Notes under the pieces: generated by a model
The model's database searches: none
Told to the model about the DNA's origin: nothing
The model's input: the letters and a program-made list of their open reading frames with translations, nothing else
Shown: piece by piece, positions 14,435-31,401 of the stretch
Position numbering within the stretch: position 1 is the first letter of the stretch
How the letters are laid out: every line of letters begins with the position of its first letter
Translations under genes and position numbers: made by a program
Virus record (IMG/VR): IMGVR_UViG_3300032285_004054
Span: 62,001-126,000 of that record
DNA: 64,000 bases
Direction: 5' to 3' (one strand)

Positions 14435-15163
14435 ATGAGCAATCCTCTATCGGACATCTACTCCAAAATCCTTTTAAACGAAACCGAATCCAATGTCGTA
14501 GTACCTGCTGGCAAATTAGAAATCGCCAAGGGAGGTAAAGAACCTCTTATCAAGGACGGCGGAGATGAGAAGGCCAAGAAGAACCTCAACAAGCCTGAAG
14601 AAGGCAAGGTTGAGGATGGCGAACTCGAGGAACTTAAAGATTCTATGAACACCCCAACAACAAAGAGCGCCTTCGAAGGTACGTTCGAAAAGCTCTTCAA
14701 AGCCACGCTCACAGAAGACGTAGCCGAAGACGCTGCTTCCGCTGTTGAGCCTGAAGTACCAACAACCCCTGAAGATTCTCACGAAGAGATCGAAGACACT
14801 CATGATGAGGTCGGTGATCTTGCTAGTGATCTTCGCGATATCATTGACAAGCTAGAAGCAATTCTTGACAAGGTCGGTGGTGTTGATCACACAGAAGGTG
14901 AACACGATGAAGACATGGAAACCGAACTCGGTGAAGCCGTTTCTGAGCCTGAATTAAAGCCTCTCGGTGATAAGACAGCCTCTTTAAAGAGCACCAAGAA
15001 GTTCACAACTTCCAATGTCAAGCCTCATGGTGGTAAGGCCTCTCATGGAGATATCTCCGAAGAGCCTGAACTCAAGCCTCTCGCTGACAAGTCTGCTGCT
15101 CTAAGAAGCACAAAGAAGTTTGCTGCTAACTCCTCCGTTAAGGTTGGCGATTTCTTCAAATAA
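14435..15163 (+). CDS. Acidic, probably abundant head-internal/scaffold-like protein
   Basis: E/D-rich; C/G-ending codon bias like gp22/gp23; several L/I-x-E protease-type sites; duplicated EPELKPL.DK.A.L.STKKF; tandem late promoters at 14418-14429; strong terminator. Confidence 0.5.
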   Translation: MSNPLSDIYSKILLNETESNVVVPAGKLEIAKGGKEPLIKDGGDEKAKKNLNKPEEGKVEDGELEELKDSMNTPTTKSAFEGTFEKLFKATLTEDVAEDAASAVEPEVPTTPEDSHEEIEDTHDEVGDLASDLRDIIDKLEAILDKVGGVDHTEGEHDEDMETELGEAVSEPELKPLGDKTASLKSTKKFTTSNVKPHGGKASHGDISEEPELKPLADKSAALRSTKKFAANSSVKVGDFFK

Positions 15164-15185
15164 GACTTAATAAAAGTTAAAATAG

Positions 15186-15215
15186 AAATAGCTCCTAGAA
15201 ATAGGAGCTATTTTT
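15186..15215 (+). terminator. Rho-independent terminator
   Basis: 12 bp stem AAATAGCTCCTA, GAAA loop, TAGGAGCTATTT, then T run. Confidence 0.9.
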
Positions 15216-15242
15216 GTATACCTAAACGGCATAAATACTATT

Positions 15243-15830
15243 ATGAATTTGTTCGAAAACTCTTATAAAGACGGCTATTTAAAATACCATAACAATTATA
15301 TTGTGCCTAATAGTTTAGATCCTAGAACATTCTATTATCCTCCTGAAGGCGGAGACCCTGTATTACACCCTGAAATTAAATTACAAGTATTAACAGATAT
15401 CGCTAGATTCAATACTCTTGAGGGAGACTTTGGGACAACAAGAGTTAAAGAGTATTATCTAATAGGACCTATACTTAAACCCGGTGCTTCTGATCGCTGT
15501 CCTATTTTTATTAAAGTACAGCTTGAAGAGAATAATCTAACAGATGTACTAAAAGAAAAGATTTTAAATTGTATGAAGGATATTGACGGTAGATTAGCTA
15601 CCGGTACCCAACATCCTGTTATGTATATACCGACAGTTAGACCTTTAAACCCAGATGATTATGATTCTGCCTATCACCCTTATACAGATAAATGGGTTAA
15701 GAAAGTTAGATCATTAGGTGAAGGTGTTAGCTCACTTGAAGGGTTAGCAAAAGACCCTGCTAAAAAGAAAAAGAAGCACGCTTTAGTTCGTGGTCAATTA
15801 CGTAAACATCTACATCAAACTAAACACTAA
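15243..15830 (+). CDS. Degenerate nucleotidyltransferase-fold protein
   Basis: LHPEIKLQVL, YLIG, GTQHPVMY and AYHPYTDKWVK resemble phage Pol-beta-type NTases, but GS/DxD is absent (LIGPILKPGASDRCPIFIKV). Confidence 0.4.
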   Translation: MNLFENSYKDGYLKYHNNYIVPNSLDPRTFYYPPEGGDPVLHPEIKLQVLTDIARFNTLEGDFGTTRVKEYYLIGPILKPGASDRCPIFIKVQLEENNLTDVLKEKILNCMKDIDGRLATGTQHPVMYIPTVRPLNPDDYDSAYHPYTDKWVKKVRSLGEGVSSLEGLAKDPAKKKKKHALVRGQLRKHLHQTKH

Positions 15831-16507
15831 TGAACAAAGTTCGTTATTTAAATAAAAGTCTTAACGCCAACGAAAGAGAAAATTACTCTAAATGGTGGAA
15901 AGAGCAGATTGAACACTACGGTGTTTCTACGACCTACTATACAAACGGTTTTGGTTTAACCTCCCAAGATTTAATTTACGGAGAAGATCCTACATCAACA
16001 TATCTTAGTTCTGGACCTGTAATTATGGTTACAGATATTACTAACGATTCTATTTTATTATCTAAGTTTGGTATTATGGCTGATTGTGATATGACAGCCG
16101 TTATACATATATCTTCTTTCTATGAAACGTTTGGTTTCGGGGCTGAACCTAAATCTGGTGATCTTATTGAATTAAAAGAATACGGAGGTTTTGGTGATAG
16201 ACCAGGCGGGAGAGGAGCTCCTATCTATCAAATAACCGAGCGTGATGATCAATACTTACCTTTAACTAATCACCTTATGGGTCATTATGTTTGGTATATC
16301 AAGTGCAAGCGCTTCGAGTACTCATCAGAGCCTGGCGTTCACGCTGAACCTGTTAATACCCAACCTGATGATAGTGGCGGATATGGCAGATTACCAGAAG
16401 GTGTTAACCCTGCCGAGCTTACAGTATCAGAACCTGATAGCGCTGATGCTGAAGCCGGAAAGATATTTGAGTATGGTGATCTTAGTAACCCTTACGGTAA
16501 CTATTAA
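15830..16507 (+). CDS. gp14: Neck protein (T4 gp14-like)
   Basis: IYGEDPTS, LSKFGIMADCDMT, EPKSGDLI and CKRFEYSSE motifs. Confidence 0.8.
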   Translation: MNKVRYLNKSLNANERENYSKWWKEQIEHYGVSTTYYTNGFGLTSQDLIYGEDPTSTYLSSGPVIMVTDITNDSILLSKFGIMADCDMTAVIHISSFYETFGFGAEPKSGDLIELKEYGGFGDRPGGRGAPIYQITERDDQYLPLTNHLMGHYVWYIKCKRFEYSSEPGVHAEPVNTQPDDSGGYGRLPEGVNPAELTVSEPDSADAEAGKIFEYGDLSNPYGNY

Positions 16508-16797
16508 TCAACTTTATCTGCAAGCGCAGCAATATAGTTTACTAGATCAATAGCTGTATCTTTACGATACCCGCCTGCAAACCGTGAATACTTTTGATCG
16601 ATAAAGGTAGCAAGCGCTATCACTTTACACACGTCATCAGTAATTTCAGCATTTTGATATTGCTTCAATAATGACTTTGTAAGATGCCAACAGCCATCCT
16701 TGCCCCAGGTATCAGCGTATTGATCGCCTCGTTCTTGCATTGTCTTTGCAACCTCTTTAAGAGTATTGGTTGCAGAAGAAATAAATTCGTTAGCCAT
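16504..16797 (-). CDS. Small all-helical nucleotide-modification-associated (DUF6378/Nmad1-like) protein
   Basis: ERGDQY...KYSR...DTAIDLVNY pattern. Confidence 0.5.
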   Translation of the reverse strand: MANEFISSATNTLKEVAKTMQERGDQYADTWGKDGCWHLTKSLLKQYQNAEITDDVCKVIALATFIDQKYSRFAGGYRKDTAIDLVNYIAALADKVD

Positions 16798-17066
16798 TAT
16801 CGGTTACCGAGCCAGTCGATAGTATTAGCGGATGTTACTTCAGTAATGTCAAAATATAGACTATGAGTGGTGCCTCCTGCCTCCACTGCGTAAGCTTTAA
16901 TCTTACGTGGAGTCTTAGAATAAGGTACTACTCTGTCTAAAGTAGATTCACTTACAATGTTGTAATTAGTACCGAACTCAGCTGCAATAGCTGCATTTAA
17001 GAACTGATTAATATCAGTACCTTGTACTTGATGTGGCTTTACTTGAAAGATAGTAGGTGTAGTCAT
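16797..17066 (-). CDS. Hypothetical protein
   Basis: 89 aa ORF; TAAATA (minus strand) at 17072-17077; TAATG coupling to the next gene. Confidence 0.7.
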   Translation of the reverse strand: MTTPTIFQVKPHQVQGTDINQFLNAAIAAEFGTNYNIVSESTLDRVVPYSKTPRKIKAYAVEAGGTTHSLYFDITEVTSANTIDWLGNR

Positions 17067-17074
17067 GATTCTAT

Positions 17075-17260
17075 TTAGTTCTTCTTGTTTTTATTAGCAA
17101 CCTCTTTCTTTTCCTTCTTAATAAGACCGAGCATAGTATGCTTAAAGTCACGTGTTTCATTGTACCAGTTCTCAAGATCCTTACCTCCGAGACCCTTTGG
17201 AGGCTGTAGATTCCAGATCTTGCTTGTTTTTAACATTTGTTTAGATGGCCAGATATGCAT
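17075..17260 (-). CDS. Hypothetical small basic protein
   Basis: ORF track 17075..17302; ATG 17260 (MHIWPSK) is the more plausible start. Confidence 0.5.
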   Translation of the reverse strand: MHIWPSKQMLKTSKIWNLQPPKGLGGKDLENWYNETRDFKHTMLGLIKKEKKEVANKNKKN

Positions 17261-17304
17261 AAGATTAGAATTAGATATTAAAATAAAAGATAGATATATC
17301 AAGC

Positions 17305-17332
17305 TTGTTTTTTATTTTTTTGCAGGTATAAT
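17305..17332 (+). promoter_or_regulatory. Sigma70-like early promoter of rnh
   Basis: TTGTTT-N16-TATAAT, 6 nt before ATG 17339. Confidence 0.6.
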
Positions 17333-17338
17333 GCTTTT

Positions 17339-18238
17339 ATGAATTTAATTATAGACGGCAGCAACGCTCTTCATCGAGCATTTTGGGTTGCAGAAACTCG
17401 ATCACCGCTTGTTAATACTAAGAATGTATGGACAGGTCCTTTGTTTATCTTTCTTAAGTCATTGAAGTCAAATGTTGATCAGTTTAAACCTGACAATATC
17501 TGGGTAACTTGGGACAAGAGACTTAATTACCCTTCAACTAATTTCCGTAAACAGTTGTCACCTGATAACTACAAACAGAATAGAGATCAAGAAAAGATCT
17601 TACGAGTGCACGAACAGCACGATATCATATCTAAGTTTCTTACCGTACTTGGTGTAAAGCAAATTTACCCTTGGGTACTTGAAGCTGATGATATTATTAG
17701 CTGGCTTGTACGTGAGAAGCTTTCTAACTCTGTTATCGTATCTGTTGATAAAGATTTGCTTCAATTGGTTGATGAGAGTACAAAATTCTTTAACCCTATA
17801 AAGAAGAAGATTATTGATGTTAATAATTTTGAGACTGAAACAAATATTAAGGTAGAACACTTTGTTTATTATAAAGCGCTACTCGGTGATAAATCCGATA
17901 ACCTAGACGGTATACCCGGTTACGGTGTACAGAAGAGTAAGAAGCTTGCTGAACAAGGTCACGATAAAATTATCGAGACTTTAACAGAAGAGGAACAAGC
18001 AGTGTTTAATCATAACATTACTATGATGAACTTATTTGGTTCGTATAATAAAGAACAGGGAGAGGTAGAATGTTACGATAAACAATATAATGAACTTTCT
18101 ACACTAAAGTCAGATATTAAAGCGTTTGAAGCACTATGTGAGGAATATGAATTAAATTCCTTCGCTAGAGATATTGATAAATGGAAGCAAAGTTTTACTC
18201 GTACGAATGCTTTAGTTGATCTTCTTTCGCTTCTTTGA
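17339..18238 (+). CDS. rnh: RNase H / 5'-3' flap exonuclease
   Basis: LIIDGSN, EADDII, SVDKDLLQL and GDKSDNLDGIPGYG FEN-family motifs. Confidence 0.92.
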   Translation: MNLIIDGSNALHRAFWVAETRSPLVNTKNVWTGPLFIFLKSLKSNVDQFKPDNIWVTWDKRLNYPSTNFRKQLSPDNYKQNRDQEKILRVHEQHDIISKFLTVLGVKQIYPWVLEADDIISWLVREKLSNSVIVSVDKDLLQLVDESTKFFNPIKKKIIDVNNFETETNIKVEHFVYYKALLGDKSDNLDGIPGYGVQKSKKLAEQGHDKIIETLTEEEQAVFNHNITMMNLFGSYNKEQGEVECYDKQYNELSTLKSDIKAFEALCEEYELNSFARDIDKWKQSFTRTNALVDLLSLL

Positions 18239-18583
18239 TTTCTTGAGGGAGTTACGTATAAGCTCTGCTTTATAAAGCTTCGAGGTAAACTCCTTTAAGA
18301 ATCGTGCTATCTCAAAAGAAGTACATACGTTAATAATTCTTGATTCTACGTAGAGAACTTTTGTTTCAGACCAGTCTGGGTATATGTAATGCACACATTC
18401 ATGAAACGCAGTTCTAACAAATTCTCTTCTAGGATCAAATTCTAGAATGTCGTTTTCGTAGTCGCATATACCTTGACTTCTACGCATCTTTTTAAACGTA
18501 AAGAACTCTGGAGGTTTACGTTTAACAAGCTTAAAGCATTGCTGATATACAACAGCTGTCTGTTTTTTTGTTAGCTTTTGCAT
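18212..18583 (-). CDS. Small HExxH zinc-metallopeptidase-like protein
   Basis: GICDY...TAFHECVHYIYPDWSE; TAAATA at 18595-18600. Confidence 0.55.
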   Translation of the reverse strand: MQKLTKKQTAVVYQQCFKLVKRKPPEFFTFKKMRRSQGICDYENDILEFDPRREFVRTAFHECVHYIYPDWSETKVLYVESRIINVCTSFEIARFLKEFTSKLYKAELIRNSLKKSKKRKKIN

Positions 18584-18641
18584 ATCTATACTAATATTTA
18601 TTTGTTTAACAGGTATAGAACGTATAAATAATAGATAATAT

Positions 18642-18932
18642 ATGTCAATAGAAGGTATCGGTTTTGATCATCAAATGTTAAGCCAAGCTGGGTTAACACC
18701 GCAGCAAAAGAAGCGTTTACCGTTTCCTCTTGAAAACATAGAGGAACAACTTGCAGATGTATACTTTGATCTCGACTTAATACGTAAACGCATTGAAGTT
18801 ACTAAACGTAACAACGTTACCAATCTTACAAAAGAACGTATTAAGCGTTTACGTAAGATGCAGTATAAGATTAATACTGCAATGTCTGTTATTAAGACAT
18901 TAACGAGAGATCTTGATGATTTTTGGATTTAA
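18642..18932 (+). CDS. Hypothetical coiled-coil protein
   Basis: 96 aa; TATAAATA at 18623-18630. Confidence 0.7.
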   Translation: MSIEGIGFDHQMLSQAGLTPQQKKRLPFPLENIEEQLADVYFDLDLIRKRIEVTKRNNVTNLTKERIKRLRKMQYKINTAMSVIKTLTRDLDDFWI

Positions 18933-19390
18933 TCCAAAGTAGACTTAAGAGGTACGCTCTCGTCAATAGGAAACGTTAGTCTTTCAAGAGGGGTAGTTAT
19001 TTGTGTTGAAATAAACTGCATCTTGACGCCATTTACTTGTTTACAATGTTCGCAGGTAAATCTATTTTCCTGATTCAATTGAATCGGTACAGGGTTTGTT
19101 TGTTTACAATACGCGCACGTTAAGCTTATTGTAAACTTCGAGATAGCTTCTAGTTGCTGTTGTACAATCTGAGAACTCGTAATAGCGTCTTTTCTTAGAA
19201 GAAACGTATTAACTATTGCAAAGATAATAAACTGTATTCCAAAACCTGAAACAAACCCTGTCCAGAAGTGGTTGTTGTAAAGGTAGAATGCTAATCCAAA
19301 AACTAACGATACAGTGCAGGTTATTAGCAATGATATAGCAATAACTCTAATGAGAGGGTTTTCTAGAATTGCTTTGAGTTTATTAAACAT
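18929..19390 (-). CDS. Two-TM membrane protein with zinc ribbon
   Basis: Two hydrophobic helices, then CAYC-x15-CEHC. Confidence 0.7.
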   Translation of the reverse strand: MFNKLKAILENPLIRVIAISLLITCTVSLVFGLAFYLYNNHFWTGFVSGFGIQFIIFAIVNTFLLRKDAITSSQIVQQQLEAISKFTISLTCAYCKQTNPVPIQLNQENRFTCEHCKQVNGVKMQFISTQITTPLERLTFPIDESVPLKSTLD

Positions 19391-19402
19391 ATAGTAATTA
19401 TA

Positions 19403-19636
19403 TTAGGTTGTAGAAATTTTCTCGTAGATAATATCGGTTGCATTGTCTACGTACTTTAGGATATCAAGAGGTTTAAGTTCAACTGTTTCGAAATCGATAT
19501 TTCTTTCCTCGCATTTTTCACCGATTAGATTAACTGCTTCTTCAAGCGCTGTCCATCGACATAGCTCATAAAGAGACAACTTTGTGATATCAACATCGGA
19601 GACTTTTGGCAATCGTTTATTGTTATGTGTTTTCAT
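19403..19636 (-). CDS. Hypothetical protein (early)
   Basis: 77 aa, downstream of a sigma70-like promoter. Confidence 0.7.
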   Translation of the reverse strand: MKTHNNKRLPKVSDVDITKLSLYELCRWTALEEAVNLIGEKCEERNIDFETVELKPLDILKYVDNATDIIYEKISTT

Positions 19637-19644
19637 ACAACACC

Positions 19645-19673
19645 AATATACAAAAAACTACTTTTACAGTCAA
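19645..19673 (-). promoter_or_regulatory. Sigma70-like early promoter
   Basis: TTGACT-N17-TATATT, 8 nt before ATG 19636. Confidence 0.65.
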
Positions 19674-19681
19674 GAAAAAAA

Positions 19682-19966
19682 TTAAATTTTTTCTAGTTCA
19701 TTGATATTTGCAGCACAAACAGAGAAAACATCTACCGGTACCTGTTCCACAAAATCGAGTAACTTTGTAGATATAGCTGCTGTATATTCTTCTTTAGAAA
19801 GAGATAATTTATATCTATCCGGTATCTGCATAAACTCTAAAACATCATTATCCCGTTTTAGAAATAAAAGAAACTCTCCTCTTCTATGCTTAGTAAAAGC
19901 GTACATACCTCTTTCCTGAGGTAGAACAATAGGTACTTTTATCTTCTTTTTAAAGAAGTTGAACAT
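19682..19966 (-). CDS. Hypothetical protein
   Basis: 94 aa ORF filling the gap between neighbours. Confidence 0.65.
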   Translation of the reverse strand: MFNFFKKKIKVPIVLPQERGMYAFTKHRRGEFLLFLKRDNDVLEFMQIPDRYKLSLSKEEYTAAISTKLLDFVEQVPVDVFSVCAANINELEKI

Positions 19967-19988
19967 CTAATAAATTTAGATTCTTTTA

Positions 19989-23108: not shown

Positions 23109-23291
23109 ATGACTCCTAGTAAAAAACAAGAAATAGAAGTTATTGTCGATCAAGCTATTGAAGCTTTAATTTTTGAAATTTTTGACGGTAACCTAAGTAA
23201 CGAAGAAGAAGTTGAATACGGTTTACGTATTTTAAAGCATAAGATTGATAATCTTGATGCTAGCGATTTCGATCACTTAATTGATTACTGA
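23109..23291 (+). CDS. Hypothetical small acidic protein
   Basis: 60 aa; TAAATA at 23093-23098. Confidence 0.65.
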   Translation: MTPSKKQEIEVIVDQAIEALIFEIFDGNLSNEEEVEYGLRILKHKIDNLDASDFDHLIDY

Positions 23292-23794
23292 AGACCTTTC
23301 AGGTAGTTACTTGTATTAGTAGTACCTGGTGTACCGGCTGGAGCTGTTCCTCCGGGAAGAGCGGAAGGTTCTTGGCTTGTTTGTAGAGGTTTTTCACTGT
23401 CACCTTTAGCCTTTTTAACTACCTCGTTAAACTTATCAACAACGGCGTCGAATGTCTCTTCGTCATGCTGATCTATTGTAGTAATATCTGTTTTATCTTT
23501 TGTATTGATAATTCTTACCTCAAAGTTACCATCAGCTGTAGGAATTACCTTTACTAGGTAGGAAAGTTTATATGTCGGGTTATCCCATATAAAGTAAAAG
23601 TTCTTATTGATATCGTCTCCTGCAATAAGCTCTCTTACATCAACAGGCTTCATTAAGCCTGTATCAATTAACTTTTTAACTAACTCTACAGTGAAATCAT
23701 ACGCACTTGTACTTGCTCTGTTAACCATAGACGGTATAACACCTGTATTATCTTCAGTAAGGAATTTCTCTACGTAGTAATCAAATCGGCTCAT
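23285..23794 (-). CDS. Hypothetical protein with capsid-targeting-like leader
   Basis: MSRFDYYVEKFLTE start; TAAATA at 23802-23807. Confidence 0.65.
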   Translation of the reverse strand: MSRFDYYVEKFLTEDNTGVIPSMVNRASTSAYDFTVELVKKLIDTGLMKPVDVRELIAGDDINKNFYFIWDNPTYKLSYLVKVIPTADGNFEVRIINTKDKTDITTIDQHDEETFDAVVDKFNEVVKKAKGDSEKPLQTSQEPSALPGGTAPAGTPGTTNTSNYLKGLQ

Positions 23795-23819
23795 TGTGTA
23801 TTATTTATTAAATAAAATA

Positions 23820-23951
23820 GTGAAAGGCTTCTTATATTATTTCTGGTTAGTATATTTTTTTATTAAGAGAGCTCCAGAGTTAATTTGTTTATTAATTTAC
23901 AGAGAGTATCTTTATATTTTACTCTTTATTCAGAGCCTTTTTGAAGATTAG
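23820..23951 (+). CDS. Possible 43 aa hydrophobic peptide
   Basis: GTG...TAG ORF MKGFLYYFWLVYFFIKRAPELICLLIYREYLYILLFIQSLFED after TAAATA at 23809-23814; below the track cutoff. Confidence 0.35.
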   Translation: MKGFLYYFWLVYFFIKRAPELICLLIYREYLYILLFIQSLFED

Positions 23952-24253
23952 CACTTCCAGCGTCTTCTAGCAGCACACCCTCTTGTATTTTTACCAGCAC
24001 AGCCCCCTGCTGGAATCCAAGCTTTACTTCTAGCACAAAAACTCTTTCTACGTTTAGAAGCTTTAGAGCCTTTTTTAACTTTACCGGTAACTGGAGCTTT
24101 GAGATGGGATCCTGTAGCACGGTTATATTTTGCTCTACCTTTTGCAGTTAAACCACCTCCACGGTTTACAGAAAGCTTTTCTCCTCTTTTTACAGAAAGA
24201 CTAGGTCCGTTTTTTTCTTCCAGTAATTGTTCTACTAATAATGTAAAATTCAT
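23948..24253 (-). CDS. Small basic conserved phage protein (DUF6321-like) with capsid-targeting-like leader
   Basis: MNFTLLVEQLLEE then GGLTAKGRAKYN...LKAPV...RRKSFCAR...RRWKC. Confidence 0.7.
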   Translation of the reverse strand: MNFTLLVEQLLEEKNGPSLSVKRGEKLSVNRGGGLTAKGRAKYNRATGSHLKAPVTGKVKKGSKASKRRKSFCARSKAWIPAGGCAGKNTRGCAARRRWKC

Positions 24254-24257: not shown

Positions 24258-24515
24258 TTATATAATAGCTGCTAATTCTCTTAATGCGTCTTCAAATGAA
24301 ACAACATCAACATTGTTTGTTTTAGTATCTAGTTTAGTTTGCTCTTCTACAGGTATAACAGATCTTAACCGTTCAAATACACCTCTTTCAAATGCATTAG
24401 CTTCAGGATCTCTTATTATGGTAGGAGAGTGTCTTCCATGACTTAAACTGGGGAGATGAATGGTCTCCTTAGGGACACACTTAGTATAAACGTCTTCTAA
24501 ATTCATATTAAGCAC
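24258..24515 (-). CDS. Hypothetical protein
   Basis: 85 aa ORF downstream of the endolysin. Confidence 0.6.
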   Translation of the reverse strand: MLNMNLEDVYTKCVPKETIHLPSLSHGRHSPTIIRDPEANAFERGVFERLRSVIPVEEQTKLDTKTNNVDVVSFEDALRELAAII

Positions 24516-25119
24516 AGCTTTCTACTAGTTTTGCTTCTGCTTCTCGTCTAGCTAGTAAACCATCGAGACCTTTGCCTTCCCAGATACGTTTCATAGAACG
24601 GAGTTCTTCAGCAATTCCTTTATAATCTTTCTTAGGTACAAGCTCTCTTATTACTCTCATTTCTGATCTACTAGGACCTGATAAGCTAGATCCTCTATTG
24701 AATACCAACGATACAATAGCGCCGTAAGCATCATCGCATAATTGATCTAAACCAGGGAATGCTTTTTCTGCTAATTTAGCAAACTTAGCCCAGATGAGCT
24801 TATTAAACATTTCAATTGCTTGATCCCAAGTAACAACTATACCGCTGTTTTTATGTTGTTGTGTATATGCTTTACCTGCTTGACCTGTCTTACCAGATGC
24901 TCCTTTAACAATATCTAATTGTTCTTTAGGTAGAAAGTAAAATAGCTTTTCGAGTTCGGTTGGTGTATAGTAACCACAATCAACACCGATACCTAATGTA
25001 AAGCCTGATGCCCCGCCTGGCCACTCCGGCTTTGTTAAATGTCTTTCGTAATAAGATTTACCGCCACCGACTTCGTATTCTAAAATTAAGTCTAATGCTT
25101 TTGGTGATGGCTGTTTCAT
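24508..25119 (-). CDS. Endolysin, lysozyme superfamily (GH24-like)
   Basis: ILEYEVGG...WPGGASGFTLGIGVD, AIVSLVFNRG and GLLARREAEAKL. Confidence 0.85.
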   Translation of the reverse strand: MKQPSPKALDLILEYEVGGGKSYYERHLTKPEWPGGASGFTLGIGVDCGYYTPTELEKLFYFLPKEQLDIVKGASGKTGQAGKAYTQQHKNSGIVVTWDQAIEMFNKLIWAKFAKLAEKAFPGLDQLCDDAYGAIVSLVFNRGSSLSGPSRSEMRVIRELVPKKDYKGIAEELRSMKRIWEGKGLDGLLARREAEAKLVESCA

Positions 25120-25769: not shown

Positions 25770-26351
25770 CTATAAAAGCAGGAACCTACTGGCTCTCAAC
25801 CAGATATAACCACCGATAAGAGCAGATAGAGCAAGGATAATTACATTACGCTTCCAGATAGCAGCGTCTTTCTTATAAATTTCTGACTGCAGATGATTGA
25901 GATCTGCTACCATCTTATCACTCATTTCTTTTTGCTTAACTAATTCGTTTTGATTTACAATCAACTGATTAGCCATATTTTTATTATCTGTCTCCAGCTG
26001 CTTTTTAATCTCTCTATCTTTTAGAAGTGTTTGATATTCGGTAGAACCTACTACAACTACCTTGTCGTTTTTATAAACATCGGGTACAATAACTACTCTT
26101 GTCTTGTCAGTGTTTTTTGAATTCTTAACGACTTGACCTGCTTCGTAGATTGCACTAATTTTAATAGGTTGTTTAGGAGGCTTAATAAACTTTGTAGTTT
26201 CGTTTGAATAGAAGAACGCTAAATCAACTCTTGCTTTTGCAAGAGAATCATTAGTAGCATAAACATTCTGGCTAACTGCTTGAGATTGTTTTTCGGTGTA
26301 CAATGTACAACCTGCTATTAATAGCACTGCTGTTAGTATAATCTTTTTCAT
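25770..26351 (-). CDS. Lipoprotein with C-terminal TM, candidate unimolecular spanin
   Basis: MKKIILTAVLLIAG-C lipobox, coiled coil, C-terminal VIILALSALIGGYIWL TM; upstream of the holin and endolysin. Confidence 0.65.
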   Translation of the reverse strand: MKKIILTAVLLIAGCTLYTEKQSQAVSQNVYATNDSLAKARVDLAFFYSNETTKFIKPPKQPIKISAIYEAGQVVKNSKNTDKTRVVIVPDVYKNDKVVVVGSTEYQTLLKDREIKKQLETDNKNMANQLIVNQNELVKQKEMSDKMVADLNHLQSEIYKKDAAIWKRNVIILALSALIGGYIWLRASRFLLL

Positions 26352-26359
26352 TTTTTTAT

Positions 26360-26920
26360 TTATAAAATAGGTTTGGATATATCAAGTATGGTATTATAGA
26401 TAATATCTCTGGCTCGTTCAACGGTCATTTCACCAAAAAGTGTAGATCTTGGATGTATTCGTACTTCTGGAAACTCTGGTGGCTCGTAAGGAGAATCGAT
26501 ACCTGTAAAGTCTTTTATCTCCCCTGCACGTGCTTTTTTATACAAACCTTTAGGATCTCTTAACTCGCAAGTACGTAAAGGTGTATCCATATACACTTCA
26601 ATAAATCTAGCGCTAGCGTATTTCTCTAGCATATCTCGAGCTTCATCTCGCATTGATCGGAGAGGGGAAATCATAGCTACAATAACAAGATTAGCCTTTT
26701 GAAAAGTAAGCATATTTTTAGCACAATAAATAGCTTCAGATACCATTCTCTGTCTACTCTTCATATCAAAGCCTTTTGGTATATCATAACTAGCTCTCAA
26801 AGCATCACCATCAATAAGACCTGTCCGGAATTGAAATATACACTTGTTATACAAAGCATTTGCAACGGTTGTTTTGCCAGCTCCAGATAAACCTGTAATC
26901 CAAACAACAGTAGGTTTCAT
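26360..26920 (-). CDS. cysC: Adenylyl-sulfate (APS) kinase
   Basis: WITGLSGAGKTT, DGDALR, ISP and RDPKGLYKKARAGEIKDFTGIDSPYEPP; start probably ATG 26920 (ATGA overlap). Confidence 0.93.
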   Translation of the reverse strand: MKPTVVWITGLSGAGKTTVANALYNKCIFQFRTGLIDGDALRASYDIPKGFDMKSRQRMVSEAIYCAKNMLTFQKANLVIVAMISPLRSMRDEARDMLEKYASARFIEVYMDTPLRTCELRDPKGLYKKARAGEIKDFTGIDSPYEPPEFPEVRIHPRSTLFGEMTVERARDIIYNTILDISKPIL

Positions 26921-27147
26921 CGATTTAAGTCGAGATGGTAAGACTCTAACAAGTTCCAAAGTTCTTGTCTCGCTGCTTCCATAGCATTAGTATACTCTTC
27001 ATGAGCATCCTCTGCTGGATACTTGACTTTGTTTCTAAGATATTGATCTAGTTCCCAAAGAACAGAATAGAACTTTCCGCCATTGTTGGCAAAGTCAAAG
27101 TCGTCTTGTTCTTCTGGTAGGTCGTAGGTTATGGTTGCTTTTGGCAT
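26917..27147 (-). CDS. Hypothetical phage protein
   Basis: 76 aa, MPKATITYDLPEEQ...WELDQYLR. Confidence 0.7.
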   Translation of the reverse strand: MPKATITYDLPEEQDDFDFANNGGKFYSVLWELDQYLRNKVKYPAEDAHEEYTNAMEAARQELWNLLESYHLDLNR

Positions 27148-27150
27148 ATA

Positions 27151-27627
27151 TTACAAATTATCCCATTCTCTACGAGATTCAAGGTTATTCTTTTTACAAA
27201 TATTACAAGGGCACTTCCATTCTTCTTCCTCCCTAGTCCATCCTCCCCAATGAATAGGGTATGAAGAATGATAAGGTTTAGGTTCTTTTTCTACGGTGTT
27301 ATTAACAATATGATTCTTTAACTTTGCAATTTCTTCTATTAGCCTGACATTCTCTTCTTTAAGATGTCTCAAATTAATAACTTCTTTTAAGAGTTCATTG
27401 TTTTTGTCTACTACTTCTTGATAAAGATTCATCCAATTTTTATTGCCCTTTTTATATTCAAGAATTTCATCTTTTAGTTCTCGATTCTCTTTATAGAACT
27501 TCTCAGACTCTCCTTTAAAGTACTCTGCTGTCTCGATAGGTACATATTGCCAACCAAATGGATTAGTACCTAGAGCATCATCAATAATTTCTTGTTCGTT
27601 TTTATTAGATCCGAATAGATTGAACAT
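27151..27627 (-). CDS. Hypothetical coiled-coil protein (early)
   Basis: Heptad region, C-terminal CPCNIC. Confidence 0.7.
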   Translation of the reverse strand: MFNLFGSNKNEQEIIDDALGTNPFGWQYVPIETAEYFKGESEKFYKENRELKDEILEYKKGNKNWMNLYQEVVDKNNELLKEVINLRHLKEENVRLIEEIAKLKNHIVNNTVEKEPKPYHSSYPIHWGGWTREEEEWKCPCNICKKNNLESRREWDNL

Positions 27628-27634
27628 AAGCTTG

Positions 27635-27662
27635 ATTATAGAGCAAAAGAAAGGTAAGTCAA
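27635..27662 (-). promoter_or_regulatory. Sigma70-like early promoter of the cysC-containing operon
   Basis: TTGACT-N16-TATAAT, 7 nt before ATG 27627. Confidence 0.7.
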
Positions 27663-27675
27663 ATAAATAGTATAG

Positions 27676-28347
27676 ATGTCCAATATTCTAGTCATTTCAG
27701 ACATTCATCTCGGAAGCCCTATTTCTAAAGTTAAATCGTTAGTTAAAGTTCTTAAGAATGAGAAGTATAATCATTTAATTCTTAACGGAGATATATTCGA
27801 TAACAAGCATATTCATAGATATAAGAAAAGACACTGGAATATTCTGAGTTTGTTAAGAAAGATATCAAAGAAGAAAAGGGTAACTTTTATTCTCGGTAAT
27901 CACGATATAAAGTCAAAGAACATTATCAAGATTCTAGGCCTGGAGTTTGTTGAAAGATTAGAACTAGAAGTAAATGGAAAGAAGATGCTGTTTATTCATT
28001 TTCATCAGTTCGATCCTTTTATCTTTAAACACCCTTGGATAACAGATATAGCAGAACAGATTTATTATTTTTTCCAGAGCATAGATAGATCAAAGAGATT
28101 CAGTAGATGGTTAAAGAGAACATCTAAAAGGTTCTTAAAAATCAAAACCAATATAAGAGACAAGGCTCTAAACTATATCAAAGACAAAAACTATGATGCC
28201 ATTTTTGGAGGACATATCCATTTTGCCGAAAGCTTTGTATGCCTAGAATCAGGAAAAGAGTATCACAACTCAGGCTCTTTTTGTGATGAACCTTGTCACT
28301 ATCTAATAATTGACAAGGAAGGTAAGGTTACTTTGAAAGAGATTTAA
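27676..28347 (+). CDS. Calcineurin-like metallophosphoesterase, LpxH-like
   Basis: SDIHLG, GDIFD, GNHD, HFHQFD and GHIH; TAAATA at 27664-27669. Confidence 0.85.
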   Translation: MSNILVISDIHLGSPISKVKSLVKVLKNEKYNHLILNGDIFDNKHIHRYKKRHWNILSLLRKISKKKRVTFILGNHDIKSKNIIKILGLEFVERLELEVNGKKMLFIHFHQFDPFIFKHPWITDIAEQIYYFFQSIDRSKRFSRWLKRTSKRFLKIKTNIRDKALNYIKDKNYDAIFGGHIHFAESFVCLESGKEYHNSGSFCDEPCHYLIIDKEGKVTLKEI

Positions 28348-28700
28348 GCAGTTGTATCGTCGTTGTTGAACCTACCTGCAGCCTGCACACCTTTACCAAA
28401 TGTTTTAAGTTCTCTTGCTCCTGAAATTGCAGCTTTAGCAACAGGTTTTACTTTACGTAATTTTAATAAATTAATTAATGAAGCAAAAGGTATTATTGCA
28501 ATAGCACTAATACCGGCATTTATAATATGCTTCTTTCTTTCATCAGAAGTATCTGCAGCAGCAGCTCGAAATGTAGAAATAACTGTGTTAGCGATATCAG
28601 CAGGAGCTCCTACTTCTGGAACCGCACCGACAAGATCTAAAGCTGCTTGTACTTTATTAACTGAATCTTCGTTGCTCTTATAAAAATCCTTAAAAGACAT
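28344..28700 (-). CDS. Small protein: capsid-targeting-like leader plus pre-toxin-like helical module
   Basis: MSFKDFYKSNE then LDLVGAVPEVGAPADIAN...AGISAIAIIP; TAAGTA at 28711-28716. Confidence 0.55.
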   Translation of the reverse strand: MSFKDFYKSNEDSVNKVQAALDLVGAVPEVGAPADIANTVISTFRAAAADTSDERKKHIINAGISAIAIIPFASLINLLKLRKVKPVAKAAISGARELKTFGKGVQAAGRFNNDDTTA

Positions 28701-28717
28701 AGTGTGTTATTACTTAA

Positions 28718-28915
28718 TCAAATTTCATAGAACCAATTCTTCTTAAACTCTTCAAACTTTTTTTTCCATAGAGTATACTTCTTAAATCTCTTTCCAGCTT
28801 TTCTGCCTTTCTTTTTTACTTTCTTAACCCCTTTAAAGATCATCCAAAAGAACCCAAGCATTCCTAGAGCAAAGAGAGCCATAGTGACATGACCTATGAG
28901 TTGAAAAGGTGTCAT
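28718..28915 (-). CDS. Small TM protein with lysine-rich tail
   Basis: One TM helix followed by a poly-basic segment; TAAATA at 28921-28926. Confidence 0.6.
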   Translation of the reverse strand: MTPFQLIGHVTMALFALGMLGFFWMIFKGVKKVKKKGRKAGKRFKKYTLWKKKFEEFKKNWFYEI

Positions 28916-28919
28916 AGTA

Positions 28920-29777
28920 TTATTTAATATTCAATATATCGGAAATAAACTTTTTAGCTGTTTGAGAAGTTGTATTGTTGTTTAAGAAATGATTCTCAAA
29001 ACGTTCAATATATTTTTCATATACTGTTTCGTATTTCTCGTTTAGAATATCTTTATTTACATTAATACATAGTTCTTTAGGAAAAGAAGTCATTGTGTTA
29101 GTAGGACATAGTTCGATATTTTTAAACAACGGTATACAACCATTACCTAAAATTTCGTAATGCCTCATACAATCCCAGCCTGCTTTTTTACATGTAACTC
29201 CGAACCGAGCATCATTATAGTCTTTATAATAATCTGTTTCATTATTATAAATGTATGTTGTTTTGTCTAGCGGTGTTATGTATGATGTATCTTTTATTTT
29301 CTTCTTATTAAAGTTTACTTTACTAGTTGGTAATCCAAACGAAATCGGTAGTAGTCGTTCTTTTGTGTATATTAATTCTCTCTTAAAATAGCAAATTCCT
29401 AAATCATATACAGGGTGTATATTAACTTCATCTTCACCGTCTACACAAATAATTTTATCTTTTGAATAATACTCTAGAATATTTTCTATATAGTCGTTAC
29501 ATCTCCAAATAGAGCCGTATACTATTAAATCGAAGTATTTGTTTTTAATTTTATTTGTTATATCCGTTCTATCTACTTCTAAATCCTCTAGTACTCTTGT
29601 TACGGTCATACCTTTACCGTACATTTGTTTAGCAACGTTCTCGCTGTAGCTTAGATAGCTGTGTTGTTGCTTTTGTATATCTACAACATTAGCCCCGTAC
29701 AACTCTTTTAACCCTATTAAAAGACAATCGTTTTGATAATCAAGATGATCACCTTTTGTGAAGTACAATATTTTCAT
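28920..29777 (-). CDS. Glycosyltransferase-like protein (GT-B, exostosin-like C-terminal motif)
   Basis: YFKRE and KAGWDCMRHYEILGNGCIP. Confidence 0.55.
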   Translation of the reverse strand: MKILYFTKGDHLDYQNDCLLIGLKELYGANVVDIQKQQHSYLSYSENVAKQMYGKGMTVTRVLEDLEVDRTDITNKIKNKYFDLIVYGSIWRCNDYIENILEYYSKDKIICVDGEDEVNIHPVYDLGICYFKRELIYTKERLLPISFGLPTSKVNFNKKKIKDTSYITPLDKTTYIYNNETDYYKDYNDARFGVTCKKAGWDCMRHYEILGNGCIPLFKNIELCPTNTMTSFPKELCINVNKDILNEKYETVYEKYIERFENHFLNNNTTSQTAKKFISDILNIK

Positions 29778-29778
29778 A

Positions 29779-29949
29779 TTAATATAATTCTTTGTACTCT
29801 ATATAGCTCTCTAAAATCTTGTCTTCAAACTTAAATTGAAGACACTCTTTACCGTCTTGTGTATATCTTTGAATAAAGATAACTTGTGTCAAGGGTACCC
29901 ATTGTTTGATATCCTCTACCCATACTGATGCTATTCTTACACCATACAT
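29779..29949 (-). CDS. Hypothetical 56 aa protein
   Basis: MYGVRIASVWVEDIKQWVPL...KELY; TAATG-coupled to the upstream ORF; below the track cutoff. Confidence 0.55.
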   Translation of the reverse strand: MYGVRIASVWVEDIKQWVPLTQVIFIQRYTQDGKECLQFKFEDKILESYIEYKELY

Positions 29950-30140
29950 TATTTGTTGCAGTGATAATTTATAAAGCGTTGAGCGGCTTTTGCAACATTA
30001 CTACCTTTATTCTTTTGCCCTGCTTTAATAGAACGAGCTTTTGAACAAGTAACCTTACCAGATACTCTACGCTTGAGTATACCTGGTCTTACTGGGTCAT
30101 TAATATTCTTTTCCAGTAGGTATTGTTTGAACGTTTGCAT
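29949..30140 (-). CDS. Small basic protein with capsid-targeting-like leader
   Basis: MQTFKQYLLE then a K/R-rich body. Confidence 0.7.
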   Translation of the reverse strand: MQTFKQYLLEKNINDPVRPGILKRRVSGKVTCSKARSIKAGQKNKGSNVAKAAQRFINYHCNK

Positions 30141-31401
30141 TTGGATGTTTAATAGCTATTTTCGGTCCACCGAGTGATATAGTTGCGATAGTAATATATT
30201 TTTCTAAATCATTATGAGGTACGTAAATATAACCTGCTGGCGATACAACGAATAGACCTGTAAGATGAGAAGGAAATAAACTCTTAATGCTTTCAGGACT
30301 CTTAATCATTTCCTGAATATCATTTACTTTATCAAGTATGTTTAGTTTTGAAACGGATTTAAAAAATTCTCTCCAACTAGATTCTCCTTCACCTGTAATA
30401 TGTACTTTAGCTTTTGAAAGTTTTTTGTCAACTATTTTAGCTGTCTTTTCAATTTCTTGATCTAAAGCTGAAGCTTTTTCGGAATTTGGTGCACTGTAAT
30501 AGCTCTTAAAGGTCTTTTTAAGAGCAGCGACTCTAGGATTATCTTCTTGAGATTTATGATCACTAGGTTCTTCACCTGCTTCTACTTGTTCATTTTCTTC
30601 TATATTGTTAATAATTGTACCGAACGTTTTAACAGACATTAAAACTCTAATACCGCCTCTAGTAAGTGCAGGTTCTTTATCAGAGTAAATAAGTGAAAAA
30701 GGAAACTCTTTTGTGTCAGATAAAATACCTTTAACCCATTTTTCAATAGACCAGCTTGTTCTTCTAAGCATTAGTTTATCGTACTGTGCACGTCCTTTAA
30801 CTGCTCTTTTACCGGGTTCTTTAACTTCTGGTAAATGAGAAACAATATAGTTGTTGATATAGGTCTTATCTTCCTCGCTTAATAGATCATATTCATCTAA
30901 AATATCGTTTAAAACATGCTTAACTTCACTAAAAAATTTCTTTGTAAAATTGGCGCCATGTTTCGCAATACGTACAGACCCTTCTTCAATCATTTTAACC
31001 TCGAAAGTATATTCAGGATGTTCTTTTGTAGGCCAAGAAACATCATAAGATTTGTTCTGTCCTGAAATAAGCTTCAAACACTGATTAGGATCTGTTATAC
31101 CTGTAATAACAGATGCAACAGCTAATTCACCCGGACCTGCGCCTGACTTTTCCTCTTCGAGTTCTGGGTAATCACTTGTTGTTTCTATCTGTTTACTAGC
31201 TGTAAGATTGTACAGATTTTGCTGTACTGGTGTCCAGGGTACAACATTTAGTATTGGTTTTGTTACATCTATACGAATACCTTCTTGAGCCTCTTCGTGT
31301 ATAGAGGTATATGCTTCATTGAGGGTACGATATTGAGATTTGTAATTGGTGTCACCAATAACTTTTTCGTATGTCTGTGTTAAAAAATGATTTTGTGACA
31401 T
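30100..31401 (-). CDS. PD-(D/E)XK restriction-endonuclease-like protein
   Basis: GAGPGELAV...SYDV-x10-FEVK; start probably ATG 31401 after TAAATA at 31412-31417. Confidence 0.5.
   Translation of the reverse strand: MSQNHFLTQTYEKVIGDTNYKSQYRTLNEAYTSIHEEAQEGIRIDVTKPILNVVPWTPVQQNLYNLTASKQIETTSDYPELEEEKSGAGPGELAVASVITGITDPNQCLKLISGQNKSYDVSWPTKEHPEYTFEVKMIEEGSVRIAKHGANFTKKFFSEVKHVLNDILDEYDLLSEEDKTYINNYIVSHLPEVKEPGKRAVKGRAQYDKLMLRRTSWSIEKWVKGILSDTKEFPFSLIYSDKEPALTRGGIRVLMSVKTFGTIINNIEENEQVEAGEEPSDHKSQEDNPRVAALKKTFKSYYSAPNSEKASALDQEIEKTAKIVDKKLSKAKVHITGEGESSWREFFKSVSKLNILDKVNDIQEMIKSPESIKSLFPSHLTGLFVVSPAGYIYVPHNDLEKYITIATISLGGPKIAIKHPNANVQTIPTGKEY

What the first reader, a model, noticed from the sequence alone, without database searches (positions are those of the whole stretch)
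14435..31401. Dispersed set of proteins with T4 capsid-targeting-like leaders: a candidate injected cargo repertoire
Seen: N-termini MQTFKQYLLE (30140), MSFKDFYKSNE (28700), MNFTLLVEQLLEE (24253), MSRFDYYVEKFLTE (23794), MSNPLSDIYSKILLNE (14435, with internal FEKLFKATLTE) and YRTLNEAYTSIHEE (near the start of 31401). Most of these genes have their own late promoter. Known: T4 internal proteins carry a ~10 aa leader (MKT[YF]..F...E) that targets them to the prohead, gp21 cleaves it after Glu, and the mature proteins are injected with the DNA. Inference: this phage packages unrelated cargo this way, including basic DNA-binding-like domains, a nuclease and a pre-toxin-like module, as a day-zero effector or anti-defence kit.
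Basis: partly seen in the sequence, partly recalled or inferred. Interest (0 to 1): 0.75.

Follow-up and report, generated by a model that had tools for sequence, protein, structure and literature searches.

The report
Capsid-targeting leaders on phage cargo proteins
An uncultured, deep-branching T4-like phage puts short N-terminal tags, almost the same as the tag T4 uses to load proteins into its capsid, on dozens of unrelated proteins, so it probably packages and injects a large protein cargo; this rests on sequence comparison only.

Summary
All six N-termini are real ORF starts at the stated coordinates. The window belongs to a 218-kb T4-like phage with gp20, gp21 protease, gp22 scaffold and gp23. 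About 30 of 316 ORFs carry an N-terminal x-F-[KND]-x-Phi-Phi-x-E motif, against about 0.3 expected. Six more carry a Phi-x-E|A-Y leader, against 0.57 expected.

By these tests c63, c118 and c101 are significant, and c452 fits the second class. c169 and c242 are only look-alikes. The motif matches the four functionally mapped T4 CTS positions and is almost the same string as T4 IPI (MKTFKEF). It also occurs twice at the N-terminus of this clade's own scaffold.

Three cargos have homologues elsewhere that lack the leader or carry a different one, and homology begins right after the leader's Glu. All six genes lie in units led by the clade's late promoter motif (TAAATA); three have their own copy.

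So a T4-type capsid-targeting, gp21-cleaved leader is the best reading (about 0.65). Packaging, cleavage and injection are untested. "Nuclease" (c452) is a weak lead, "pre-toxin" (c118) is not supported by Pfam, and an anti-defence role is speculation.

The parts
29949..30140 (-). c63: 63-aa protein. Leader MQTFKQYLLE (nt 30111-30140) followed by a 53-aa basic module (pI 11.2).
   Evidence: PSSM 17.9 bits. Same length and key positions as the T4 CTS MKTYQEFIAE. Homology to 91 clusters starts at residues 3-14 in all but three, around Glu10, and the module is otherwise at the C-terminus of larger proteins. The start overlaps the c452 stop by 41 nt.
28344..28700 (-). c118: 118-aa helical, basic protein with leader MSFKDFYKSNE (nt 28668-28700).
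   Evidence: PSSM 15.7. The leader M-x-(x)-F-K-[DE]-[YF]-[YF] is kept in 11 of the 13 homologues. Homologue P0139 is a c118+c63 fusion with junction RFDE|KSIDEP. Pfam PT-TG is not detected. The AF2 model is poor, pLDDT 56.
23948..24253 (-). c101: DUF6321 protein with leader MNFTLLVEQLLEE (nt 24215-24253); mature part pI 11.8.
   Evidence: Pfam DUF6321, E 1e-18, on residues 30-99. PSSM 13.4. Near homologues carry leaders, whereas distant ones (T7-like cyanopodoviruses, HTVC028P, MaMV) start MAxKKRKKGPSLS with no leader.
30100..31401 (-). c452 (433 aa from ATG 31401): conserved 37-40-aa N-terminal region ending RTLNE|AYTSIHEE|, then a variable linker, then a body with a PD-(D/E)xK-like motif.
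   Evidence: Own TAAATA at 31412-31417. Class-2 leader. 16 homologues, with invariant E92, D120, E134 and K136. AF2 pLDDT 78. Only weak fold matches to endonucleases.
23285..23794 (-). c169: acidic 169-aa protein with N-terminus MSRFDYYVEKFLTE (nt 23753-23794). Candidate leader, weak.
   Evidence: Own TAAATA at 23802-23807. PSSM 7.3, p 0.026. Resembles the leader MNRFDRYVNSILE of P0166. No homologues found beyond a near-identical contig.
14435..15163 (+). c242: acidic, largely disordered-looking 242-aa protein with N-terminus MSNPLSDIYSKILLNE (nt 14435-14482) and internal TFEKLFKATLTE. Candidate leader or prohead-core protein.
   Evidence: TAAATA at 14418-14429. PSSM 5.5 at the N-terminus and 9.4 at the internal site. 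A 41%-identical homologue keeps M.N.LSDIY...L.E and EG.FEKLFK.TLTE. It lies next to a gene with a sub-threshold Pfam match to the T4 neck protein (E 3e-4, 20.5 bits, below the 25-bit cut-off).
46462..47436 (-). gp22 scaffold. Its N-terminus M-NFKEILKD-QFKDLITE-E carries the leader motif twice.
   Evidence: 14.5 bits. Relatives have M[DN]FKxILKE|QFKDLITEE or MIKNILNE|QFKDL. The T4 parallel is gp22 MLKEQLIAEA against the CTS ..EFIAEA.
47623..48297 (-). gp21 prohead protease (Peptidase_S77), the presumed leader peptidase.
   Evidence: PF03420, E 5.6e-30. N-terminus MGLKFLVE|D..LDFLVEE|.
44935..46404 (-). gp23 major capsid protein. Predicted maturation site ..ENQEKWCFE|SS.
   Evidence: PF07068, E 1e-90. 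In 75 relatives the conserved N-terminal domain ends at Phi-x-E|[ASG] and is followed by a hypervariable stretch.

Best explanation
The leaders are T4-type capsid-targeting propeptides.

Proposed mechanism: late in infection each tagged protein is made with a 9-40-residue amphipathic N-terminal helix. Class 1 is M-x-(x)-F-[KND]-x-Phi-Phi-x-E and class 2 is ..L-I-x-E|A-Y..Phi-x-E. This helix imitates the N-terminus of the gp22 scaffold, so the protein co-assembles into the prohead core. When the shell closes, the gp21 protease cuts after the Glu of Phi-x-E and the mature protein stays in the head with the DNA.

Shown here: the motif, its enrichment, its identity with the T4 CTS, its modularity, and the presence of the gp21/gp22/gp23 machinery and late-promoter motifs.

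Inferred: core binding, cleavage, retention in the head, and ejection into the host.

The reading is strongest for c63, c118, c101 and c452. It is weaker for c169 and c242, which may be core proteins instead. The same tag marks about 30-40 proteins genome-wide.
For: 1. T4-like head machinery is in the window: gp21 S77 protease, gp22, gp23 and gp20.

2. In T4, CTS residues 4 and 7 direct targeting and residues 8 and 10 direct processing. The class-1 motif has an aromatic, a hydrophobic, a hydrophobic and a Glu at exactly those spacings. c63 MQTFKQYLLE lines up with MKTYQEFIAE residue for residue.

3. Positive control: the same regex on 106 kb of T4 finds IPII, IPIII and gp61.1 (MKTFKEFIKE), and IPI starts MKTFKEF. 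Environmental carriers start MKTFKQFISE, VKTFKQFFIE and MITFKQFLLE.

4. Enrichment: 16 against 0.84 expected, about 30 against 0.3, and class 2 at 6 against 0.57. Relatives G001, G003 and G004 show both classes.

5. The scaffold gp22 of this clade starts with the motif, twice. This parallels T4 gp22 and its CTS.

6. Modularity. DUF6321 homologues outside the clade lack the leader. The c63 module is preceded by at least six different leader 'dialects', each ending Phi-x-E directly before the module. The g174909 homologue starts at MGGNIF, without the 18-aa leader. In the c118+c63 fusion only the first module keeps a leader. Carriers of other dialects sit on contigs with a T4-type portal.

7. 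Selection acts at protein level: codons at the conserved positions vary, for example GAA 8 and GAG 8.

8. The predicted gp23 maturation site in 75 relatives has the same Phi-x-E|small form.

9. All six genes lie in TAAATA-led units.
Against: - There are no proteomic or biochemical data, and the clade has no cultured member. The best gp23 match in the phage collection is 35% identical.
- c169 and c242 do not pass the PSSM test.
- Gene by gene, leader status is not associated with having an own late promoter: 8 of 25 against 73 of 291, p 0.48.
- The tag marks about 10% of ORFs, including a 17-member paralog family. In relatives it sits on a cytidylyltransferase-like enzyme. That is more cargo, and odder cargo, than T4 is known to carry.
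- A few PSSM hits are plainly unrelated N-termini. Examples are the ORF starting MFQGLFVEKYRP, which from its N-terminal sequence I take to be a clamp-loader subunit (not tested), and a hit that starts at residue 15 of another ORF.
- In the more distant relatives G003 and G004, the gp22 N-terminus has no aromatic residue, so scaffold mimicry is not universal.
Confidence: 0.65

Rival explanations
1. The N-terminal helix is a shared tag for some other process, such as self-association, membrane or chaperone binding, or targeting to another intracellular site. Its likeness to the T4 CTS would then be convergence of short amphipathic helices.
For: Short amphipathic helices are common. The tag sits on enzymes (MoxR AAA+, VWA-metallopeptidase, a cytidylyltransferase-like protein in relative G004) that are not classic head proteins. 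There is no per-gene link to an own late promoter. The complex prediction gave no verdict, so it counts neither way.
Against: The leaders are a near string match to T4 IPI and gp61.1. The same motif is on the scaffold itself. The leader always ends in Phi-x-E directly before the homologous cargo, which is what a Glu-specific prohead protease needs. Carriers are found with T4-type portals.
Confidence: 0.15
2. c242 and c169 (acidic, with their own late promoters) are prohead-core or scaffold accessory proteins of the T4 gp67/gp68 kind. They would be degraded by gp21 and expelled, not delivered as cargo.
For: The predicted mature parts are acidic, pI 4.6 and 4.8. c242 has a conserved internal Phi-x-E island, FEKLFKATLTE. 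It also sits beside a gene with a sub-threshold match to the T4 neck protein. T4 gp67 and gp68 are acidic core proteins with N-terminal Phi-x-E.
Against: No homology to gp67 or gp68 was found. These two genes lie far from the gp21-gp23 module.
Confidence: 0.12
3. The motif is a nucleotide-level or gene-cassette feature: A/T-rich codons 2-4 that help translation of short-leader late mRNAs, or a recombination junction of tandem paralog arrays.
For: In the arrays the downstream MSFK codons overlap the upstream ..DVI stop, and the SD GGAGG lies inside the FGG codons. Late genes have 4-14-nt leaders without an SD.
Against: Codons at conserved positions are diverse. The pattern is in amino-acid classes and reaches to a Glu 8-16 residues in. 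Stand-alone genes without the junction carry it too (c63, c118, and g37945 outside the window). Other phages use different leader sequences with the same ending.
Confidence: 0.05
4. Chance resemblance plus paralogy.
For: About half of the class-1 hits belong to one 17-member family, and loose Phi-x-E patterns are common.
Against: Enrichment is 19- to 100-fold with Henikoff weighting of paralogs. Unrelated cargos share the tag. It recurs independently in relatives and in T4.
Confidence: 0.03

Closest known systems
T4 internal proteins IPI, IPII and IPIII and their capsid-targeting sequence (Mullaney & Black 1996, as reviewed in PMC9026906 and PMC3012670)
   Same: A 10-19-aa N-terminal leader with an aromatic at position 4, hydrophobics at 7 and 8, and Glu at the cut site. 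Small basic cargo. Unrelated cargos share one tag. A gp21 protease and gp22 core are present. The string MKTFK[EQ]F is shared.
   Different: The host phage is only about 35% identical in gp23 to any cultured phage. There are about 30-40 tagged ORFs rather than a handful. Two leader classes and longer leaders (up to about 40 aa in c452) occur. The cargo includes enzyme-like proteins and a large paralog family. Nothing has been tested experimentally.
T4 Alt (ADP-ribosyltransferase packaged via a propeptide and cleaved by gp21)
   Same: A large enzyme loaded into the head through a cleaved N-terminal propeptide.
   Different: No Alt homologue was identified among the tagged proteins. The tagged enzymes here are MoxR AAA+, VWA-metallopeptidase, an LRR-like protein and a nuclease-like protein.
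Ejection proteins of giant phages phiKZ and SPN3US with propeptides cut at [SAG]-x-E (PMC5694885)
   Same: Many different head-internal proteins, a Glu-specific prohead protease, and conserved N-termini on diverged paralogs.
   Different: Those propeptides are mostly over 100 residues and no gp22 homologue is known there. Here the leaders are short and T4-like, and they mirror gp22.
Encapsulin cargo-loading peptides
   Same: A short, transferable peptide that loads unrelated cargo into an HK97-fold shell.
   Different: They are C-terminal, bind the shell directly and are not cleaved. This comparison is from general knowledge and was not tested here.

Membership tests
T4-type CTS-tagged head-internal proteins | The phage encodes the T4-type prohead protease gp21 (S77), the gp22 scaffold core and the gp23 shell. 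| tested here: met
   PF03420 E 5.6e-30, PF07068 E 1.2e-90, and a gp22-like ORF between them.
T4-type CTS-tagged head-internal proteins | An N-terminal leader of about 10-19 aa with aromatic and hydrophobic targeting residues (T4 positions 4 and 7) and processing residues Phi(8) and Glu(10). | tested here: met
   Met by c63 exactly, by c118 and c101 on the PSSM, and by c452 through the class-2 motif. c169 and c242 are not significant on their own.
T4-type CTS-tagged head-internal proteins | The leader is a separable module shared by unrelated cargo. | tested here: met
   Homologues without a leader or with other leaders, and homology that starts after the Glu.
T4-type CTS-tagged head-internal proteins | Late (virion-assembly) expression. 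| tested here: inconclusive
   All six genes lie in TAAATA-led units, the motif shared with structural genes. There are no transcript data, and the per-gene association is not significant.
T4-type CTS-tagged head-internal proteins | The leader is removed by gp21 after Glu. | not testable with these tools
   Only the motif is consistent. The gp21+c63 complex prediction gave no verdict.
T4-type CTS-tagged head-internal proteins | The mature protein is present in heads and ejected with the DNA. | not testable with these tools
   There is no cultured relative and no virion proteome.
PD-(D/E)xK nuclease (c452) | A conserved acidic/Lys catalytic motif on a restriction-endonuclease-like fold. | tested here: inconclusive
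   E92, D120, E134 and K136 are invariant in 16 homologues. There is no Pfam hit and no significant Foldseek PDB match. VIA-align gives I-Ssp6803I Z 5.1, and NhoI and HinP1I Z 4.8, all within noise. Atlas neighbours at 0.83 are weak.
PT-TG pre-toxin domain (c118) | A match to PF14449 and a C-terminal toxin module. | tested here: not met
   No Pfam match in c118 or in any of its 13 homologues. The protein ends after 118 aa, or in homologues carries basic tails. The only support is a language-model lead at 0.93.
DUF6321 (c101) | A match to PF19846 above its cut-off. | tested here: met
   68.1 bits against a 28.5-bit cut-off, on residues 30-99.

The most novel reading that the evidence does not exclude
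The CTS may not be a T-even peculiarity. It may be an ancient cargo-loading code that is conserved across the T4 superfamily and has diverged into lineage-specific 'dialects'. Examples are MxFKxFFxE, MNKDxxLIxE|AY, MIKLxDILxE and MKKSELxEIVREVIxE, and they tend to mirror each lineage's gp22 N-terminus. Under this reading, environmental T4-like phages use the code to load tens of different proteins into the head. These would include enzymes, nuclease-like proteins, a mobile basic C-terminal module released at internal Phi-x-E sites, and large paralog arrays. The injected proteome of uncultured phages could then be read directly from genome sequence.
Probability: 0.4. Interest if true: 0.78.

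Novelty: new member of a known kind. Interest (0 to 1): 0.6.

Why it matters
If the leaders work as in T4, genome sequence alone predicts which proteins an uncultured phage carries into the cell at time zero. In T4 that class includes anti-restriction (IPI) and host-takeover (Alt) factors. It would give a simple rule for mining counter-defence candidates from metagenomes: a tag matching the phage's own scaffold N-terminus and ending in Phi-x-E. It would also show that the CTS, used as a T4 engineering tool, is conserved over a very deep divergence. Finally, it would mean that head-internal cargo can be far more diverse in T4-like phages than the few proteins known in T4.

Tried and rejected
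- Complex prediction of gp21 with c63 scored 0.01, so there is no verdict. It is not evidence either way.
- megablast of the region against cultured phages found no match.
- Homologues of c169 and c452 were sought in five large relative contigs and none was found. The contigs are 27-66% complete, so this is uninformative.
- Foldseek of the c452 model against PDB found nothing at E <= 0.001. VIA-align wide gave only helical-bundle noise, with three endonucleases at Z about 5.
- The AF2 model of c118 has pLDDT 56 and was too poor to search.
- Pfam PT-TG for the c118 family gave no match.
- PHROGs for five of the six proteins gave no match.
- The exact T4 late promoter TATAAATA is too strict: only 25 copies in the genome, 14 of them close upstream of genes. 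It was replaced by the empirically enriched core TAAATA.
- A first scan using the TTG start of c452 at 31458 missed its promoter. This was corrected with the ATG at 31401.
- Strict co-variation of leader dialect with the gp22 N-terminus could not be tested within single genomes. The distant relatives G003 and G004 do not fit neatly.
- Literature searches found no description of CTS-like leaders outside the T-even phages and giant phages.

Full report
**What the window is.** The window is bases 62,001-126,000 of a 218,400-bp IMG/VR virus record with 36% G+C. It encodes a T4-type head module:
- portal gp20 (52880-54802, -);
- prohead protease gp21 (47623-48297, -; Peptidase_S77, E 5.6e-30);
- scaffold gp22 (46462-47436, -);
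- major capsid protein gp23 (44935-46404, -; PF07068, E 1.2e-90).

The nearest gp23 in the collection of cultured phages is 35% identical and belongs to cyanomyoviruses. IMG/VR holds hundreds of uncultured relatives at 65-82% identity. So this is a deep, uncultured branch of the T4 superfamily.

**The observation.** All six N-termini are ORF starts at the given coordinates.

**Is it more than chance?** In T4, mutational work places targeting at CTS residues 4 and 7 and processing at residues 8 and 10 of MKTYQEFIAE. I turned that into the pattern ^M.{0,3}[FYW]..[hydrophobic][hydrophobic].E.

- It hits 16 of 316 crude ORFs of the whole genome, against 0.84 expected from the pattern's internal frequency.
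- A paralog-weighted PSSM, iterated from those hits, gives a bimodal result. Thirty proteins score 12.5 bits or more (null p <= 0.0008, about 0.3 expected), nearly all starting at residue 1-4. The next score is 9.1.
- A few hits are clearly unrelated N-termini. One is an ORF starting MFQGLFVEKYRP, which from its N-terminal sequence I take to be a clamp-loader subunit (not tested). Another starts at residue 15 of its ORF.
c169 (7.3) and c242 (5.5; its internal TFEKLFKATL scores 9.4) are not.
- c452 belongs to a second recurrent leader, [LIVMF]-x-E|A-Y followed about 8 residues later by another Phi-x-E. This has 6 N-terminal cases against 0.57 expected. It recurs in relatives as MNKDxxLI[FY]E|AY, and G001 has ..RTLNEAYSVILE in an otherwise distant 514-aa protein.
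- Codons at the conserved positions are diverse (Glu: GAA 8, GAG 8), so selection acts on the peptide.

**Positive control.** On 106 kb of T4 the same pattern finds three ORFs against 0.58 expected: IPII, IPIII and gp61.1 (MKTFKEFIKE). T4 IPI starts MKTFKEFTSTTTPVSTITE|A. Leaders in this clade and in other environmental phages read MQTFKQYLLE, MITFKQFLLE, MKTFKQFISE and VKTFKQFFIE. The likeness to T4 is therefore close to string identity, across phages whose capsid proteins are about 35% identical.

**Link to the scaffold.** gp22 of this phage begins M-NFKEILKD-QFKDLITE-E, which is the motif twice. Close relatives have M[DN]FKxILKE|QFKDLITEE and others MIKNILNE|QFKDL... T4 shows the same relation: gp22 MLKEQLIAEA against the CTS ..QEFIAEA, and its gp21, gp67 and gp68 also start with Phi-x-E. 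In 75 relatives the conserved N-terminal domain of gp23 ends at ..EKWCFE|[AS] or WCL[NR]E|[AG], followed by a hypervariable stretch. That is the expected shape of a gp21 maturation site, and it has the same form as the leader ends.

**Modularity, the strongest comparative evidence.**
- *c101.* The Pfam DUF6321 domain covers residues 30-99. The family has more than 7,900 members. The nearest ones carry leaders: MNFELLVEQILEE|GGPSLS, MxxLFESRFIEVLEE|K, MTNNFDIYVESILLE|KK. More distant ones start directly with a basic stretch, MAxKKRKKGPSLS; these include cultured T7-like cyanopodoviruses, Pelagibacter phage HTVC028P and Microcystis MaMV. In T4-like S-CRM01 the domain ends a 516-aa protein next to gp17.
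- *c63.* A search of 1.8 billion representatives finds 91 clusters. In all but three the match starts at query residues 3-14, around the predicted cut at Glu10, and runs to about residue 61, and the module lies almost always at the extreme C-terminus of proteins of 45-425 aa. In the shortest proteins the module (..[KG][SE][IV]H-DPVRPGILKR..) is preceded directly by quite different leaders, each ending Phi-x-E: MQTFKQYLLE|, MKSLFDKKVEEILE|, MDFQNLIEQILEE|, MNNFPSFKTFFE|, MKKSEIKEIVLEVLYE|. Even in long carriers a Glu is conserved 4-5 residues before the module.
- *Fusion.* P0139, seen on two independent contigs, fuses a c118-like protein to a c63-like module. Only the first part bears a leader, and the junction reads RFDE|KSIDEP.
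- *g174909* (outside the window) reads MLSESFLSFYKNGSYITE|GGNVFG. Its homologue in another phage starts MGGNIF.
- *Other dialects.* Carriers of two other dialects (MIKLIDILNE, MKKSELREIVREVI) lie on contigs with a T4-type portal and terminase. They sit in arrays of small genes, several of which share the local dialect.

**The individual proteins.**
- c63 and c101 are very basic after the predicted cut (pI 11.2 and 11.8), like the T4 internal proteins. c118 has pI 9.7.
- c118's leader is kept in 11 of its 13 homologues. The 'pre-toxin' idea has only a language-model lead. Pfam PT-TG matches none of 14 family members, and the fold model is poor.
- c452 has 16 homologues. They share a strongly conserved 40-residue N-terminus (MSDYFLNKxYDSLL...FRTLSESYxLVYEE), then a hypervariable linker, then a body with invariant E92, D120, E134 and K136. 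That pattern suits a PD-(D/E)xK nuclease. However, Pfam, Foldseek and VIA-align give no clear match, so 'nuclease' stays a lead.
- c169 and c242 are acidic. c242 keeps its N-terminus and the internal FEKLFKATLTE in a 41%-identical homologue. It lies beside a gene with a sub-threshold Pfam match to the T4 neck protein. Either could be a core protein rather than cargo.

**Expression.** The enriched upstream word is TAAATA, 4-14 nt before the ATG and usually without a Shine-Dalgarno sequence. It precedes 81 genes, among them the tail-fibre, baseplate, sheath, portal, protease and scaffold genes; gp23 itself lacks a nearby copy. c242, c169 and c452 have their own copy, and the other three lie downstream in such units. 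Gene by gene, carrying a leader is not associated with having an own promoter (p 0.48), because many tagged genes sit inside operons.

**Conclusion.** The best-supported reading is that these are T4-type capsid-targeting propeptides cut by gp21, and that the phage loads a large and varied set of proteins into its head. The motif, its statistics, its modularity and the presence of the machinery are shown. Binding to the core, cleavage, retention and injection are inferred. The complex prediction of gp21 with c63 returned no verdict. The literature held here describes the CTS for T-even phages and long propeptides for giant phages. It does not describe CTS-like leaders in distant environmental T4-like phages. 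I therefore file this as a new member of a known kind, with a wider, untested possibility set out under the novel case.

Noticed in passing
outside the window: genome 7.3-9.6 kb, 195.3-199.0 kb, 208.2-210.7 kb, plus 37945-39933(-) and 194210-195175(-) (loci L106, L108, L109, L110): A 17-member paralog family is joined by a conserved C-terminal ~35 aa (..AI.DWE.K..LSKDT[KR]DSFGGLLDV[IL]*) with variable middles. Most members, but not all, also carry the MSFKxFFxE leader. The 321-aa member contains the C-terminal motif three times. The function of this C-terminal motif is unexplained; it might be a second targeting or processing signal.
   Followed up: partly
genome 195.3-199.0 kb (L108): In the tandem arrays the gene junction is GAT TCA TTT GGA GGx TTA TTA G ATG TCA TTT AAx. 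The upstream ..DVI stop and the downstream MSFK start are encoded by the same bases in two frames, and the SD GGAGG lies inside the FGG codons. This suggests translational coupling and a possible recombination joint.
   Followed up: partly
whole genome; e.g. window 14418-14429, 23802-23807, 31412-31417, 47447-47456, 48311-48316: The late-promoter-like word TAAATA ends only 4-14 nt before the ATG of 81 genes, usually with no Shine-Dalgarno sequence. This implies very short 5' leaders on late mRNAs. gp23 itself lacks a nearby copy and has an SD-like stretch instead.
   Followed up: partly
outside the window: genome 37945-43796(-) (L106): A late operon holds three large tagged proteins. One is a 662-aa protein that looks leucine-rich-repeat-like by eye (Pfam found no family). 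The second is a MoxR-type AAA+ ATPase with an 85-aa low-complexity N-terminal extension. The third is a DUF2201_N metallopeptidase + VWA protein.
   Followed up: partly
T4 NC_000866 18966-19130(-) (L125): T4 gp61.1 (54 aa, hypothetical) starts MKTFKEFIKE, a CTS-like N-terminus close to that of IPI. I did not check whether it is known to be packaged.
   Followed up: no
window 30100-30140: The c63 start codon lies 41 nt inside the 3' end of c452, in another frame. c63 has no promoter or SD of its own.
   Followed up: no
window 14900-15163: c242 ends in two copies of a ~35-aa repeat (EPELKPL.DK.A.L[KR]STKKF...) and a conserved C-terminus VKVGDFFK, which a 41%-identical homologue (L119) keeps.
   Followed up: partly
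window 11412-13971 and 41352-44396: Several fibre-like paralogs share an N-terminal C[IL]GDSL.T[IL]N.NF motif (six genes in one BLAST cluster).
   Followed up: no
window 26360-26959(-), 27676-28347(+), 31491-32285(+), 17339-18238(+), 24508-25119(-): The candidate genes are interspersed with an adenylylsulfate (APS) kinase (E 4e-45), a calcineurin-like phosphoesterase, PhoH, a 5'-3' exonuclease of the RNase H/FEN type, and a phage lysozyme.
   Followed up: partly
S-CRM01 HQ615693 36814-38364 (L117): In this cultured T4-like cyanophage DUF6321 is the C-terminal domain of a 516-aa acidic protein directly upstream of gp17. Its N-terminus MSNRIQDELLDVFLE|T resembles that of c242.
   Followed up: partly
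relative G004 62921-64785(-) (L096): Two adjacent tagged genes in a relative: MRFDDLVNE|.. on a cytidylyltransferase-like (HxGH) enzyme, and MITFKQFLLE|GGVAGHMAHPFD on a 403-aa protein of unknown family.
   Followed up: partly
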